Positions 56,490 to 64,000 of a stretch of 64,000 nt of DNA are shown here, one piece after another. The notes beneath the pieces are model-generated. The model was not told where the DNA came from, made no database searches, and saw only the letters and a list, made by a program, of their open reading frames with translations. Location of the stretch: IMG/VR virus record IMGVR_UViG_3300046092_000062, positions 124,001 through 188,000 of that record; one strand, 5' to 3'. The position numbers and the translations under genes were made by a program. Each line of letters opens with the position of its first letter. The stretch's first letter is position 1.

Positions 56490-56876
56490 TTGATGATCAA
56501 GTACATTAAAGAAACCACCACGCCAGCGGATGTAATTAGACCTGTGTTCCGCCCAGAACTCAAGCATGTGTTTGATGCAAGGGATGCAATTATTACAAAA
56601 TATAATGTTGCAGGTACCGAAACAACCCACGAAAAAACAGATTTACCAGACGGGTCAAAAATCACTGTAATGGTCAAGTTCTTTGAGTCTGTAGAGAAGT
56701 TTGATCAATGCTTTGCAGAGTTGCGAGATGCAAATCAAACTATCACTGCAACAGTCAACAATGAAAATGTCACAGTTGACTCAATCAACCACAATTTTGG
56801 AATCACAATTCGATATCAATTGCGTGATGCAGAGACTGACGAAATTGTACGAGATTGGACAGTTGCAGGTCGTTAA
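56490..56876 (+). CDS. late hypothetical protein
   Basis: CTAAATA and AGGAG upstream. Confidence 0.65.
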   Translation: MMIKYIKETTTPADVIRPVFRPELKHVFDARDAIITKYNVAGTETTHEKTDLPDGSKITVMVKFFESVEKFDQCFAELRDANQTITATVNNENVTVDSINHNFGITIRYQLRDAETDEIVRDWTVAGR

Positions 56877-56902
56877 ATTATAGCCTTGTGCTATAATGTA
56901 AG

Positions 56903-57226
56903 TTATTGCTGTATGAAGCAAAGAGAAAAGTGTTCTGGACGCGGGTTCGACTCCCGCCAGGTCCACCATTAAGCATACTACCCGACTGTAAAATTCAGTA
57001 AGCATTTAGGGAAGATCCACAGTAGTATGTTTAATAATGGGCCTGCCATGGTTTCGACAGGGCAACAAGTAAACAAGTGGACAGCTCGGCAATGTGAAAG
57101 CCGTTAGGGTTGGGGATTCCCGGCCGTAGAAGCAAAAAACGTAAATGCAAACGACGAACAGTTTCTAATGGTAGCCTGATAAAGGCTTCCGGGGCAGCTA
57201 TGCCTTGCAACAGGAAATAGTAATAG
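56903..57226 (+). ncRNA. ssrA: circularly permuted (two-piece) tmRNA
   Basis: T-arm and 3' acceptor strand GCGGGTTCGACTCCCGC-CAGGTCC-A-CCA (ends 56968) precede the 5' end GGGCCTG..TTCGAC (57039); G3-U70 Ala pair; tag ORF 57147-57179 ANDEQFLMVA. Confidence 0.9.
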
Positions 57227-57246
57227 GGGCTTCGGCCCCTATTTTC
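57222..57246 (+). terminator. intrinsic terminator
   Basis: AATAGGGGC-TTCG-GCCCCTATTTT. Confidence 0.85.
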
Positions 57247-57265
57247 TAATTACATACTCTATTCA

Positions 57266-58234
57266 ATGAAAAAATTCTTTTGTCCTGCACCGTGGCGATC
57301 TTTGTTCTACCATGTTGATCAATCGGCTGTGTGCTGCATTAGTTCTAAGAAGTTTAGCATGAGTCCAATAGAGTTTAGAAATAGCGACTACCTTAAAGAT
57401 TTAAAAACTAAATTTTTAAATAACGAGTTCGACGAAACTTGCAGTGGATGCAAGTCTCTAGAAGACGCAGGGCTGCAAAGTATAAGACAGCACCTACTCG
57501 CACTATACAGTGAGACCACAGTTGACCAACTCGATTATATGGAGCTGCGAGCAAGCAATCTTTGTAATTTTCAGTGCAAGATGTGCAATAGTGAAAACAG
57601 CTCTCTTATCAGTGGCTCAGTTAATACCGTCTTAGATTCTGACTGGGACGAAATACTTACTATGTCAGAGAATCTAAAGTTCCTTACATTAACTGGCGGC
57701 GAGCCAATGATAATTAAGCACTACTACCAGTTACTGGATCACTTGATAGCTAAAGACAAAACAGACATTAACTTGCGAGTCTACACCAATGCAAGTGTGT
57801 ATAATCACATATTCGTTGAGAAGCTGCTGAAATTTAATACAACATTAAACCTCAGTGTTGACGGAGTAGGAAGAACAGCAGAACTACAACGCACAGGCAC
57901 AGTCTGGTCTACAGTACAAGATAACATTACCAAGTTTGTGGCTTTACCGATTCAGATAAAATTTCATACCACTCTCACAAACATCTCGATCGTTGACATA
58001 CACTCGTTGGCCAAGTACTTTGTCGAGATAGTTGAAAATAATCCCCACTGCACCTTTGTTGCACATACTGCCAACAGTCCCAAATACCTATCCATTTACA
58101 ATCTAGCGCCTGCATTGTTTAACACCGCATTACGTAGCATCGAATCTGCACTAGGCATTCTAGTGCATCCACAATTTGCACAACTCAGAGAGCAGTTGGT
58201 TGCACATCAATCACTAATCAAAAGCAAACAATAA
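57266..58234 (+). CDS. radical SAM protein with N-terminal Cys (twitch/SPASM-like) domain
   Basis: CNFQCKMC, GGEP, TNAS, SVDG; FCPAPW, CC, C..C. Confidence 0.88.
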   Translation: MKKFFCPAPWRSLFYHVDQSAVCCISSKKFSMSPIEFRNSDYLKDLKTKFLNNEFDETCSGCKSLEDAGLQSIRQHLLALYSETTVDQLDYMELRASNLCNFQCKMCNSENSSLISGSVNTVLDSDWDEILTMSENLKFLTLTGGEPMIIKHYYQLLDHLIAKDKTDINLRVYTNASVYNHIFVEKLLKFNTTLNLSVDGVGRTAELQRTGTVWSTVQDNITKFVALPIQIKFHTTLTNISIVDIHSLAKYFVEIVENNPHCTFVAHTANSPKYLSIYNLAPALFNTALRSIESALGILVHPQFAQLREQLVAHQSLIKSKQ

Positions 58235-62058: not shown

Positions 62059-63462
62059 ATGAAACTCTCTAAAAACATCATTCTCAACACCGACAGCTAC
62101 AAAGTGTCAATGGGCCGCCAATACCCAGCTGGCACTACCAATGTATTCAGCTACATTGCAGCACGTGGTGGTAAATTCACATTCACGCAGTTTGTTGGAC
62201 TGCAAATGTTCATCAAGGAGTATTTGCTTGAACAAATCACCAAAGAAGACATCGACATTGCAGAAGAAATCCTCACAGCGCACGGCGAGCCATTTGACCG
62301 CAGCATGTGGGACTACATTGTCGAAGCACACAACGGCTACTTGCCAGTGGTCATTAAAGCCGTACCAGAAGGCACTGTTGTGCCAGTTGGCAACGCATTA
62401 GTCACAATCGAAAACACTGACCCCAAGTGCCACGGTTTAACTACTTGGTTGGAAACTCCATTGCTTCGCGCAGTGTGGTACCCAACTACAGTCTCAACAC
62501 AAAGCAAGTACATTAAAAACATCTTGCAAGAATACTTGGAGAAATCAGGTGATCCTGCTTCTATCGGTTTTAAACTGCACGATTTTGGTGCTCGTGGTGT
62601 ATCTTCAATGGAGAGTGCTGGTATTGGGGGTGCAGCCCACTTGGTCAACTTCATGGGCACGGACACTATTACTGGTGTTCTTTACGCTCGTGAATATTAC
62701 AATGCTGGTATTGCTGGATTTAGCATTCCTGCAGCCGAACACAGTACTATCACTAGTTGGGGTCGCGCAGGCGAACTGAACGCTTACAGCAACATGGTTA
62801 CACAGTTTGGCAAGCCAGGCGGCATTGTTGCAGTTGTGTCTGACAGCTATAACATCTACGAAGCATGTAAAATGTGGAGCACTGGTGCGCTGAAACAGCA
62901 AGTGATTGATTCAGGTGCCACAGTTGTTATCCGTCCTGACTCAGGTGATCCTGTTGACGTGATGCCAAAGATGATTGCAATTCTTGCAGAAGGTTTTGGT
63001 TACACTACAAACGACAAGGGCTACAAAGTTCTCAACAATGTGCGTATGATCTGGGGTGATGGTATTAACCCATTGTCAATCCAAAGCATCTTGCGCACAA
63101 TGGTTGACGTGGGTGGTTGGAGTGCAGACAACTTTGCGTTTGGTATGGGCGGTGCTTTGTTGCAAGCAATTGATCGTGATACACAAAAATGGGCTATGAA
63201 ATGCTCAAGTGCATGTATCGATGGTGAATGGGTTGATGTTTACAAAGACCCAATCACTGACAGCGGCAAAGCTTCACTCAAAGGTCGTGTCAAGTTGTGG
63301 ACCAACAGTGGTGGCGAGTTTGCGACAAGTGTGCAAGCCCCTACTGGTTGGAGCGACAAGGGCATCGGTGGTTGGGTTGATGCAATGAAAACTGTCTACA
63401 TGGATGGTGCATTGTTTAACGAAATCACCTTTGAAGAAGTTCGTGCTAACAGCATGAAATAA
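62059..63462 (+). CDS. nadV: nicotinamide phosphoribosyltransferase (NAMPT)
   Basis: TDSYK, LHDFGARG, PAAEHS, VSDSY, RPDSGDP, GDG, FGMGG.L. Confidence 0.96.
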   Translation: MKLSKNIILNTDSYKVSMGRQYPAGTTNVFSYIAARGGKFTFTQFVGLQMFIKEYLLEQITKEDIDIAEEILTAHGEPFDRSMWDYIVEAHNGYLPVVIKAVPEGTVVPVGNALVTIENTDPKCHGLTTWLETPLLRAVWYPTTVSTQSKYIKNILQEYLEKSGDPASIGFKLHDFGARGVSSMESAGIGGAAHLVNFMGTDTITGVLYAREYYNAGIAGFSIPAAEHSTITSWGRAGELNAYSNMVTQFGKPGGIVAVVSDSYNIYEACKMWSTGALKQQVIDSGATVVIRPDSGDPVDVMPKMIAILAEGFGYTTNDKGYKVLNNVRMIWGDGINPLSIQSILRTMVDVGGWSADNFAFGMGGALLQAIDRDTQKWAMKCSSACIDGEWVDVYKDPITDSGKASLKGRVKLWTNSGGEFATSVQAPTGWSDKGIGGWVDAMKTVYMDGALFNEITFEEVRANSMK

Positions 63463-63514
63463 TGAGTAACAAGGGCATTGACTAACATCGGTGCTCTTGT
63501 TATAATTACAAAAT

Positions 63515-63589
63515 GCGCTAGTAGCTAAATGGTATAGCAGGAGTTTCTAAACCTCTGAATCGCGGGTTCGATTCCCGCCTAGCGCACCA
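63515..63589 (+). tRNA. tRNA with CUA anticodon (amber suppressor)
   Basis: GCGCTAG/CTAGCGC acceptor, GCTA/TAGC D stem, GGAGT-TTCTAAA-CCTCT anticodon arm (CTA 63547-49), GCGGG-TTCGATT-CCCGC, encoded CCA; promoter 63478-63506. Confidence 0.8.
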
Positions 63590-63699
63590 TAGTTAAGTAC
63601 ATTAGCGGTTTGCCTGGGAACCAGTAGAGCGATCTATCCAGGACGGAACAAAGTGGGCAAGTTGGTTCTTGCTACTCCGGCAGTGTACTTAACTATGGT
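63586..63699 (+). ncRNA. unknown structured RNA closed by an 18-bp stem
   Basis: ACCATAGTTAAGTACATT pairs with AGTGTACTTAACTATGGT; two internal hairpins with complementary loops. Confidence 0.55.
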
Positions 63700-63714
63700 T
63701 AATAAGGAAATAAC

Positions 63715-63999
63715 ATGCAAGTAATGCACGACAGAGTTTTAATTAAGAAACTCGAACCCGAAACAAAATCCGCAGGTGGCATTATGCTAACGACTTCAGT
63801 AACTCCAGTTTACGAAGCTGAAGTTGTAGCAGTAGGCACAGGCAAGCCCGTTAAAGACGGCGCACCTATTCCACTTACGGTAAAAGTTGGTGACCGAGTG
63901 ATGTACAATCCTTCTGCTACTATTACTGTAACAGTCAAGGGCGAAACTTTGCTAGTAATCAAGGAAGAAGAAATCTTCGCTATTTTGGACAACGAGTAA
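63715..63999 (+). CDS. groES: co-chaperonin GroES
   Basis: HDRVLIK, KSAGGI.L, VVAVG.G, VKVGDRV, EEEIFAI. Confidence 0.93.
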   Translation: MQVMHDRVLIKKLEPETKSAGGIMLTTSVTPVYEAEVVAVGTGKPVKDGAPIPLTVKVGDRVMYNPSATITVTVKGETLLVIKEEEIFAILDNE

Positions 64000-64000
64000 A

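What the first reader, a model, noticed from the sequence alone, without database searches (positions are those of the whole stretch)
63586..63699. Unknown multi-stem RNA with a loop-loop pseudoknot directly after the suppressor tRNA
Seen: an 18-bp closing stem begins at the tRNA's ACCA. Inside are CCTGG/CCAGG with a TAGA-GCGA-TCTA GNRA hairpin and an AACCAG bulge, and AGTGGGCAAG/CTTGCTACT with loop TTGGTT complementary to AACCAG. The tmRNA intervening segment has the same layout (CCA, long stem, structured insert). Inference: tRNA-processing signals are used to excise small structured RNAs, or the stem controls tRNA 3' maturation by sequestering CCA. It does not match hammerhead or HDV/theta ribozyme cores by eye.
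Basis: partly seen in the sequence, partly recalled or inferred. Interest (0 to 1): 0.7.

Follow-up and report, generated by a model that had tools for sequence, protein, structure and literature searches.

The report
Mobile stem-bounded RNA cassette after tRNA
The structured stretch after the suppressor tRNA is one copy of a large, apparently undescribed family of small cassettes in freshwater phages: a conserved 18-bp helix, often built onto a tRNA's CCA end, encloses a highly variable small RNA and moves between phages as a unit.

Summary
An 18-bp helix starts at the tRNA-CUA's ACCA (63586) and closes at 63699, and no Rfam family matches it. Only the closing helix is statistically unusual: whole element z -5.5, interior alone z +0.1.

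The element is not unique. Scans of viral contigs found 386 distinct elements in 159 loci, at least 9 of them in this phage. They share the helix consensus ACCAUAUUGAAACACAUU / AGUGUGUUUCAAUAUGGU. Their interiors fall into about 279 unrelated classes.

- About half start at N73-CCA of a tRNA, and many overlap G1-G3 of the next tRNA.
- The phage's permuted tmRNA has the same layout in its intervening segment.
- Helix pairs covary, and 88% of elements lie in tRNA sense.
- Cassettes behave as discrete mobile units. The window's element is 100% identical in a phage whose tRNA and groES are only 68-70% identical. In 11 of 25 near-identical cassette pairs both flanks are unrelated, and empty sites exist.

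Best reading: a mobile, stem-capped small-RNA cassette whose helix insulates the cargo and probably marks it for processing out of tRNA transcripts. Processing and cargo function are inferred, not shown. The loop-loop pseudoknot is unproven. I found no description in Rfam or in the literature searched.

The parts
63478..63506 (+). Sigma-70-type promoter (TTGACT, 17 nt, TG-TATAAT) that would start transcription 1-2 nt before the tRNA
   Evidence: 11 of 12 consensus matches with an extended -10 TG. No +strand terminator-like site lies between here and groES.
63515..63589 (+). tRNA with anticodon CUA (amber suppressor type), CCA encoded
   Evidence: Rfam tRNA 66.7 bits. A tRNA-CUA sits upstream of groES in all 8 related loci.
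63586..63699 (+). The cassette: a stem-bounded element of 114 nt
   Evidence: fold, z -5.46. (PWM scan scores it as a family member). (100% identical in L006 despite diverged flanks).
63586..63603 (+). 5' arm of the closing helix; its first 4 nt are the tRNA's A73-C-C-A
   Evidence: 16-nt exact inverted repeat, extended to 18 bp with a U.G pair. Family consensus.
63682..63699 (+). 3' arm of the closing helix, ending UAUGGU
63613..63642 (+). Inner hairpin: CCUGG/CCAGG helix, AACCAG bulge (63619-63624), upper helix and GNRA tetraloop (63629-63632)
   Evidence: Natural variants keep the GNRA loop (GCGA, GCAA, GUAA) and show one compensatory pair, C28-G57 to U-A.
63652..63676 (+). Second inner hairpin with loop UUGGUU (63662-63667), complementary to the AACCAG bulge
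   Evidence: Variants give a G-C to G.U change in the stem and U77>G in the loop. The pseudoknot is unproven.
63707..63999 (+). Shine-Dalgarno AAGGA (63707-63711) and groES-like ORF (63715-63999), left unpaired by the fold
56965..57040 (+). Intervening segment of the permuted tmRNA: a helix starting at ACCA and ending at the G of the coding piece, with arms resembling the family consensus

Best explanation
The element is one member of a large family of mobile, stem-bounded small-RNA cassettes. They live in the tRNA arrays and in the permuted tmRNA gene of freshwater phages.

**Shown**
- A conserved helix of about 18 bp (consensus ACCAUAUUGAAACACAUU ... AGUGUGUUUCAAUAUGGU) encloses a hypervariable interior with a median length of 62 nt.
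- The helix pairs covary, and elements lie in the same orientation as the tRNAs.
- The 5' arm commonly incorporates the upstream tRNA's N73-CCA, and the 3' arm commonly overlaps G1-G3 of the next tRNA.
- The cassette is present or absent, and is exchanged, between phages as a discrete unit bounded exactly by the helix.

**Inferred**
- In the transcript that starts at the promoter at 63478, the helix folds on its own and loops the cargo out between the tRNA and the groES message.
- The helix acts as an insulating and processing module. Host double-strand-specific or tRNA-end-processing nucleases (RNase III, with RNase P, RNase E and exonucleases) would then release the tRNA 3' end, the downstream RNA and a stem-capped small RNA.
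- This would resemble T4 species 1 and 2 RNAs and the excised tmRNA intervening segment.
- What the individual cargo RNAs do is unknown. How the cassette moves at the DNA level is also unknown; arm-mediated recombination or a trans-acting endonuclease are possibilities.
For: **Family and helix**
Helix length from the ends was bimodal: 6-9 bp (chance) against 15-23 bp.
- A PWM scan found 386 unique elements in 159 loci, 8 of them in this genome; with the copy at genome 63999-64128 that gives 9, and all but the window's lie in the tRNA region.
- 94.5% of helix positions pair, against 82.7% (maximum 83.5%) when partners are shuffled. Position 8 shows all four Watson-Crick pair types.
- At positions 12-17, G.U pairs outnumber A.C 388 to 19. 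Position 17 is U.G in 56% of elements.
- 338 elements lie on the strand of the nearest tRNA and 46 on the opposite strand.

**Phasing with tRNAs**
- 190 of 386 elements start at N73-CCA, and 145 abut the next tRNA. In the tRNA-anchored subset of 166 elements, 39 next-tRNA junctions overlap by 2-3 nt.
- The tmRNA intervening segment has the same layout.

**Cargo**
- The interiors form about 279 sequence clusters. Clusters show compensatory changes, up to 12 interior pairs in one cluster.
- The window's own element keeps a GNRA loop and has one compensatory pair.

**Mobility**
- L002 against L006: element 114/114 identical, while the tRNA is 68%, groES 70% and outer flanks about 50% identical.
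- In 11 of 25 near-identical cassette pairs both 150-nt flanks are below 70% identical, and the cassettes follow different tRNAs.
- Relatives show empty sites, and different cassettes occupy the same site.

**Transcription context**
- A promoter sits directly upstream and no terminator lies before groES.
- The Shine-Dalgarno sequence is left unpaired.
Against: - No direct evidence of transcription, cleavage or a stable product. The RNA-library contig is low depth, comes from a relative, and could be DNA.
- The phage encodes no RNase III. The most frequent neighbouring protein in other loci (PF04308, RNase H-like) is absent from this genome. Any processing enzyme is therefore assumed to be the host's.
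- Interiors are not thermodynamically exceptional: window interior z +0.10, family median z -0.65.
- About a third of members have an A.C mismatch at helix position 9, while G.U is nearly absent there (128 against 3). A simple RNA-pairing model does not predict this.
- The strongly conserved helix sequence, and the exact match between helix ends and the unit of transfer, equally suit terminal inverted repeats of a DNA element.
Confidence: 0.55

Rival explanations
1. Purely selfish miniature inverted-repeat DNA element. The 18-bp arms are terminal inverted repeats recognised by a trans-acting transposase or endonuclease. The RNA helix is only a harmless by-product that lets the insertion be tolerated between tRNA genes.
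For: - Exact-unit transfer and unrelated flanks, plus presence/absence polymorphism.
- Conserved arm sequence with a fixed asymmetric A.C mismatch at position 9.
- The junction ACCA-TA...TA-UGGU is compatible with a TA target duplication.
- HNH and GIY-YIG endonuclease genes are frequent neighbours of the arrays.
Against: - Copies within a genome do not share their interiors (about 279 interior classes), unlike a MITE burst.
- Interior classes are conserved across phages with compensatory changes, GNRA loops and T-loops.
- Orientation is locked to tRNA sense and G.U pairs are favoured on that strand.
- Where no tRNA is adjacent, the outer 4 bp still pair and covary, so they belong to the element and are not a target duplication.
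- No transposase was identified.
Confidence: 0.2
2. A device that controls maturation of this particular suppressor tRNA. It would hold the CCA end in a helix until a cleavage event, timing amber suppression.
For: - The helix pairs A73-C-C-A with UGGU.
- A tRNA-CUA upstream of groES is conserved in 8 loci.
- Precedent: theta ribozymes directly follow phage suppressor tRNAs (PMC10879173).
Against: - Relatives carry the same tRNA-CUA with no element, or with unrelated cassettes.
- Most family members follow tRNA-Lys, Glu or Leu, or no tRNA at all.
- The genome shows no sign of TAG recoding. TAG ends 7% of long ORFs, and reading it as sense lengthens ORFs no more than doing so for other stops.
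Confidence: 0.1
3. A 5'-UTR element of groES, acting as an mRNA-stabilising 5' stem-loop, thermosensor or riboswitch.
For: - The element ends 15 nt before the groES start codon and is co-transcribed from the promoter at 63478 with no terminator between.
- After tRNA removal it would form the 5' end of the message.
Against: - The Shine-Dalgarno sequence and AUG are not sequestered.
- No riboswitch family matches.
- Homologous groES genes follow the tRNA directly without it.
- Family members mostly lie between tRNAs, not before ORFs.
Confidence: 0.08
4. A self-cleaving ribozyme that trims the tRNA 3' trailer, functionally like theta/HDV-like ribozymes.
For: Position immediately 3' of a phage suppressor tRNA, as for theta ribozymes (PMC10879173).
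Against: - No match to any ribozyme model at E up to 10 here, or at E up to 0.05 in 20 other loci.
- The only family-wide conserved part is a regular helix, and interiors share no core.
- The helix begins upstream of the required cleavage site.
- CCA is encoded here, whereas only 4.5% of tRNAs associated with theta ribozymes encode it (PMC10879173).
Confidence: 0.04

Closest known systems
Phage T4 species 1 and 2 RNAs (rnaC, rnaD)
   Same: Small RNAs of 119-139 nt encoded inside a phage tRNA cluster, co-oriented with the tRNAs. Their ends pair, and rnaC has a T-arm next to its 3' strand. Their role is still unknown (PMC3014915).
   Different: T4 rnaC and rnaD lack the conserved 18-bp helix and its fusion to CCA. 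No sequence similarity was found. T4 has two such RNAs, not a diversified, mobile family.
Intervening segment of two-piece (permuted) tmRNA
   Same: It lies between an encoded CCA and the 5' end (RNase P site) of the next RNA piece, forms a hairpin, and has to be removed from the precursor. The window's own tmRNA shows this, with arms resembling the family consensus.
   Different: Rfam models treat the segment as an unstructured variable loop. Here the same kind of helix is spread through tRNA arrays and carries diverse cargo, including a roughly 63-aa ORF in L020.
Theta (minimal HDV-like) ribozymes next to phage tRNAs (PMC10879173)
   Same: A structured RNA directly 3' of phage tRNAs, including suppressors. 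The proposed role is tRNA 3'-trailer processing.
   Different: No HDV fold or ribozyme match here. CCA is encoded. The phages are freshwater rather than gut. The conserved part is a plain helix, so any cleavage would need a protein enzyme.
Bacterial MITEs such as Correia elements
   Same: About 100-150 bp, with terminal inverted repeats and a TA-compatible junction. The transcript folds into a long hairpin that could be an RNase III substrate (from general knowledge). Presence/absence polymorphism is seen here.
   Different: Interiors are unrelated between copies. Elements are orientation-locked to tRNAs. No transposase or unambiguous target duplication was found. MITEs are reported as rare in viral genomes (PMC11602168).
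RNase III processing stems (rRNA operon stems, T7 R1.1-type sites)
   Same: A helix of about two turns, formed by sequences flanking a functional RNA in a polycistronic transcript (general knowledge).
   Different: Cleavage was not tested. The helix sequence is conserved far beyond what RNase III is known to need. The A.C mismatch at position 9 is unexplained.

Membership tests
HDV-like / theta ribozymes | Nested double-pseudoknot fold detectable by the Rfam HDV-type covariance models | tested here: not met
   cmscan of 63400-63800 at E up to 10 lists no ribozyme family. None was found at E up to 0.05 in 20 further loci holding family members.
HDV-like / theta ribozymes | Cleavage site at the ribozyme's own first nucleotide, directly after the tRNA body, with mostly CCA-less tRNAs | tested here: not met
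   The helix starts at A73, four nt before the needed cut, and CCA is encoded. Only 4.5% of tRNAs associated with theta ribozymes encode CCA (PMC10879173).
Other small self-cleaving ribozymes (hammerhead, twister, pistol, hatchet, hairpin) | Conserved catalytic core matched by Rfam models | tested here: not met
   Interiors share no core across the family.
MITE (miniature inverted-repeat transposable element) | Terminal inverted repeats of at least 10-15 bp | tested here: met
   18-bp arms, with a 16-nt exact repeat in the window.
MITE (miniature inverted-repeat transposable element) | Flanking target-site duplication | tested here: inconclusive
   ACCA-TA...TA-UGGU is compatible with a TA duplication. 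However, the outer 4 bp pair and covary even away from tRNAs, so they look like part of the element.
MITE (miniature inverted-repeat transposable element) | Multiple copies sharing the internal sequence, with a cognate transposase | tested here: not met
   About 279 interior clusters among 386 elements. The 9 copies located in the own genome show no interior similarity detectable by BLAST. No transposase was seen among frequent neighbours.
T4 species 1/2-type stable RNAs | Encoded within, and co-oriented with, a phage tRNA cluster | tested here: met
   8 of the 9 own-genome copies lie in the tRNA region on the tRNA strand. 338 of 384 elements lie on the strand of the nearest tRNA.
T4 species 1/2-type stable RNAs | Accumulates as a processed stable RNA | not testable with these tools
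   Only assembled contigs from RNA libraries were available.
T4 species 1/2-type stable RNAs | Sequence or structural homology to rnaC/rnaD | tested here: not met
   T4 rnaC and rnaD have no 18-bp conserved helix or CCA fusion.
tmRNA intervening segment | Lies between an encoded CCA and the 5' end of the next processed RNA | tested here: met
   In the tRNA-anchored set of 166 elements, the next tRNA overlaps the 3' arm by 2-3 nt in 39 cases. The tmRNA segment itself is shown. In the window's own case the downstream partner is an mRNA, not a tRNA.
Intrinsic terminator | G+C-rich hairpin followed by a U tract | tested here: not met
   No +strand terminator-like site at 63300-64000. The arms are 29% G+C.
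Riboswitch / RNA thermometer of groES | Known aptamer, or sequestration of the Shine-Dalgarno sequence | tested here: not met
   No Rfam match. The last 21 nt, including the Shine-Dalgarno sequence, are unpaired in the fold.
Y RNA / YrlA with Ro (Rsr) | Ro (TROVE) protein partner and Y-RNA model match | tested here: not met
   No TROVE domain in the genome. No Y RNA match.
RNase III substrate | Regular double-stranded helix of about two turns | tested here: met
   Helices of 18-23 bp.
RNase III substrate | Cleaved by RNase III | not testable with these tools
   The phage encodes no RNase III. A host enzyme would be needed.

The most novel reading that the evidence does not exclude
Phage tRNA arrays act as a platform for a mobile library of small RNAs. 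Hundreds of unrelated cargo RNAs, and occasionally a mini-ORF, are each packaged in one standard 18-bp helix. That helix would be the handle for dedicated machinery, serving both RNA release and DNA-level cassette exchange. The cargos would be functional effectors such as decoys, aptamers or guides used against host defences or translation control. In effect this would be an integron-like system for non-coding RNAs.
Probability: 0.25. Interest if true: 0.9.

Novelty: new variant of a known kind. Interest (0 to 1): 0.75.

Why it matters
- **A new class of small phage RNAs.** Large phages carry big tRNA arrays whose non-tRNA spacers have been ignored. If those spacers hold a standardised, exchangeable cassette system for hundreds of small RNAs, this is a new class of phage non-coding RNA genes and a new kind of mobile unit.
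- **tRNA maturation.** It would bear on how phage tRNAs and two-piece tmRNAs are matured.
- **T4 species 1 and 2 RNAs.** It gives a comparative handle on the 50-year-old question of what these RNAs do.
- **A practical tool.** A portable 18-bp helix that lets arbitrary RNAs be inserted next to tRNAs without harming them would also be useful for engineering.

Tried and rejected
**Searches that found nothing relevant**
- Rfam at gathering and E-value thresholds on the window region, on the second own-genome copy, on L004/L005 and on 20 further loci found only tRNA and tmRNA.
- An inner-sequence pattern scan of viral contigs gave six chance hits in coding regions.
- BLAST against 50,697 cultured phage records matched only the tRNA part. 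Synechococcus phage S-CBWM1, the nearest tRNA-Lys hit, lacks encoded CCA and lacks the helix.
- The arm-consensus scan of 185,579 prokaryote genomes gave mostly chance hits. True elements appeared only on small contigs of freshwater MAGs, probably mis-binned phage DNA.
- Five literature searches found no description of the family. Papers read: PMC10690425, PMC10879173, PMC3014915, PMC9964418, PMC11602168.

**Candidate partner proteins**
- RNase III and Ro/TROVE are absent from this genome.
- PF04308, the most frequent neighbour elsewhere, is also absent.
- Proteins in the own tRNA region (ArfB-like, radical SAM, phosphatase, amidohydrolase) suggest no processing enzyme.

**Weak or negative results**
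- Weak tRNA-model hits in other loci turned out to be odd tRNAs, not cargo.
- The TAG-recoding test was negative.
- Reads from RNA libraries were only assembled contigs, so no ends or depth could be read.

Full report
**What is at the coordinates**

The window is bases 124001-188000 of a 320,767-bp IMG/VR phage record. Matching metagenomes are freshwater.

ARAGORN and Rfam find a tRNA with anticodon CUA at 63515-63589, with CCA encoded. A near-consensus sigma-70 promoter (TTGACT, 17 nt, TG-TATAAT, 11 of 12 matches) ends at 63506, so transcription would start 1-2 nt before the tRNA. No terminator-like site lies on the + strand before the groES-like ORF at 63715-63999.

- an 18-bp closing helix whose first four bases are the tRNA's ACCA;
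- a CCUGG/CCAGG helix carrying a GNRA-capped hairpin and a bulge;
- a second hairpin with loop UUGGUU.

The fold has z -5.46. In the longer fold the tRNA cloverleaf and the element coexist, and the Shine-Dalgarno sequence stays free. The interior alone, however, folds no better than shuffles (z +0.10). The statistical signal is therefore the closing helix. No Rfam family matches at E up to 10.

**Relatives of this locus**

Eight viral contigs with a groES relative all have a tRNA-CUA just upstream. They fall into three groups:
- L007, L008 and L009 have no insert; the tRNA is followed within 15 nt by groES.
- L002, L003 and L006 carry the window's element.
- L004 and L005 carry different stem-enclosed inserts at the same place, again beginning CCAUAG, followed by a second, tandem stem-enclosed insert.

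L002 and L006 are identical at 114 of 114 positions in the element. They are only 68% identical in the tRNA, 70% in groES, 53% in the 15-nt spacer and about 50% further out.

Metagenome contigs add more cases. Some have empty sites. One has a simple hairpin with a T-run in place of the element. One carries a copy of the element preceded by unrelated sequence. Three are diverged variants. Those variants keep the tetraloop as GNRA (GCGA, GCAA, GUAA) and give one compensatory pair (C28-G57 to U-A) and two G-C to G.U changes. For the proposed loop-loop pairing they give only A-U to G.U and the loss of the terminal wobble. Several changes break the outer junction helices of the minimum-energy fold.

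The two inner hairpins are therefore plausible. The multi-way junction and the pseudoknot are unproven.

**The element belongs to a large family**

An inverted-repeat scan of the whole genome found a second case. A 20-bp helix starts at the ACCA of tRNA-Lys(UUU) and encloses 91 nt that end in a T-arm-like motif. An Rfam side-result exposed a third case after the next tRNA-Lys.

I then scanned viral contigs for a tRNA T-arm, then ACCAUA, a gap and UAUGGU. Helix length counted from the ends was bimodal: 6-9 bp (chance) against 15-23 bp. The long helices share a sequence: ACCAUAUUGAAACACAUU on the 5' side and AGUGUGUUUCAAUAUGGU on the 3' side.

A position-weight scan that did not require a tRNA gave these results:
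- 386 unique elements in 159 loci, up to 11 per locus, with a median length of 98 nt.
- 8 of them in this genome; together with the 63999-64128 copy, which the scan missed, that makes 9. All are on the + strand, and all but the window's lie inside the tRNA region at 54-76 kb.
- 338 on the strand of the nearest tRNA and 46 on the other.
- 190 beginning at N73-CCA of a tRNA, 145 abutting the next tRNA, and 147 adjoining neither and often standing in tandem.

In the tRNA-anchored set of 166 elements, the next tRNA overlaps the 3' arm by 2-3 nt in 39 cases.

Within these loci, which were selected for having an element, helices follow 80% of tRNA-Lys(UUU), 43% of tRNA-Glu(UUC) and 42% of tRNA-Lys(CUU). 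They follow 0 of 99 tRNA-Asp and 0 of 70 tRNA-Gly(UCC).

**Evidence that the helix is selected as a structure**

- 94.5% of helix positions pair, against 82.7% (maximum 83.5% in 200 trials) when 3' arms are dealt to other elements.
- Position 8 occurs as U-A, A-U, G-C and C-G (171, 154, 37, 12).
- Where no tRNA is adjacent, the outer four pairs change together: CUUA/UAAG, ACUA/UAGU, GUUA/UAAC and others.
- At positions 12-17, G.U pairs outnumber A.C 388 to 19, and position 17 is U.G in 56% of elements. This fits an RNA read in tRNA sense. An ascertainment-free recount on tRNA-anchored elements agrees.

One oddity remains. Position 9 is A.C in 113 elements and G.U in only 3. I cannot explain this.

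**The cargo**

Interiors have a median length of 62 nt and 48% G+C, against 29% in the arms. They fall into about 279 BLAST clusters. Clusters that recur in different phages show compensatory changes in their inner helices, for example 12 interior pairs in cluster 2 and 5 in cluster 0. A T-loop-like motif occurs in 33 of 386 interiors.

Interiors are not unusually stable as a group (median z -0.65). None matches an Rfam family. In L020 the equivalent helix inside a permuted tmRNA gene encloses a roughly 63-codon ORF with its own Shine-Dalgarno sequence.

**Mobility**

Among 25 pairs of cassettes at least 95% identical over their full length, 11 have both 150-nt flanks below 70% identical, and 7 more have one such flank. 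The junction printouts show the same cassette behind different tRNAs, or behind no tRNA, with identity stopping at the helix ends. Together with the L002/L006 comparison and the empty sites, this shows that the helix-bounded unit is exchanged between phages.

The mechanism is not shown. HNH and GIY-YIG endonuclease genes and a T4-type RNase H are common neighbours of the arrays, as in the T4 tRNA region. Because all cassettes share their arms, arm-to-arm recombination could swap cargo. Neither idea was tested.

**Distribution**

No cultured phage record holds the element. In 185,579 prokaryote genomes, true elements occur only on small contigs of freshwater MAGs.

**How it most likely works**

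Three things are shown: a conserved, covarying, sense-oriented helix; its phasing with tRNA ends; and its cassette-wise mobility.

The rest is inferred. In the polycistronic transcript the helix folds locally and brings the end of one tRNA next to the start of the next RNA. It would serve as an insulating and processing module, much as rRNA processing stems and the tmRNA intervening hairpin do. Flanking RNAs would mature normally, and the cargo would be released with paired ends.

In the window this would yield tRNA-CUA, a stem-capped RNA of about 110 nt, and a groES message. Alternatively, the groES message would keep the element as a protective 5' structure. The enzyme would have to be the host's, because the phage has no RNase III.

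Pure selfish DNA remains a serious rival. The ribozyme and riboswitch readings failed their tests.

**Comparison with known systems**

- The closest classical analogue is the pair of T4 stable RNAs rnaC and rnaD. They lie in the tRNA cluster and their function is still unknown (PMC3014915).
- The closest functional analogue is the theta ribozyme next to phage tRNAs (PMC10879173).
- The closest structural analogue is the two-piece tmRNA intervening segment.
- The closest mobile analogue is a Correia-type MITE, though MITEs are reported to be rare in viruses (PMC11602168).

The family meets none of these definitions fully (see the membership table). I found no description of it in Rfam 15 or in the literature searched. 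That is not proof that none exists.

**Limits**

- There is no direct RNA evidence.
- The loci were selected by a pattern that requires A73 and UA after CCA, so tRNA preferences and frequencies are biased.
- Orientation calls use the helix's own asymmetry.
- The 3' arms of two metagenome variants could not be read.

Noticed in passing
window 56876-57270: The phage carries a permuted (two-piece) tmRNA of betaproteobacterial type with tag ANDEQFLMVA. This hints at a betaproteobacterial host.
   Followed up: partly
L020:723-960: In a related phage, the helix-bounded intervening segment of the permuted tmRNA gene encloses a roughly 63-codon ORF with its own Shine-Dalgarno sequence.
   Followed up: no
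window 63515-63589 and whole genome: An amber-suppressor-type tRNA is conserved upstream of groES in 8 related phages. Even so, the genome shows no sign of TAG recoding. TAG ends 21 of 291 long ORFs, and reading it as sense gains no more ORF length than doing so for other stops. Its amino-acid identity was not established.
   Followed up: partly
G000:C1:63360-63749 (L456:10361-10747): An ArfB-like protein (RF-1 domain, 129 aa) is encoded inside the tRNA region. Together with the tmRNA and the suppressor tRNA it forms a ribosome-rescue and termination theme.
   Followed up: no
G000:C1:~64380-64410; also L255, L199: A T-arm followed by the conserved string CUACAAUGAGUU precedes cassettes in three different phages. 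ARAGORN does not call it, so it may be another tRNA-like RNA.
   Followed up: no
family-wide, helix position 9: About a third of family members have an A.C mismatch nine pairs from the helix base, while G.U is almost never seen there (128 against 3). This is the opposite of every other variable position.
   Followed up: partly
G000:C1:58006-58180: A 13-bp inverted repeat encloses the whole tRNA-Ile(AAU) gene, which lacks an encoded CCA. This is a different helix-around-a-tRNA arrangement.
   Followed up: no
window 62059-63462: A nicotinamide phosphoribosyltransferase-like gene lies directly upstream. It has more than 160 relatives in viral contigs.
   Followed up: no
L173:531-645: A tRNA-model hit of 115 nt has a roughly 40-nt insertion, possibly an intron-containing or disrupted phage tRNA.
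   Followed up: no
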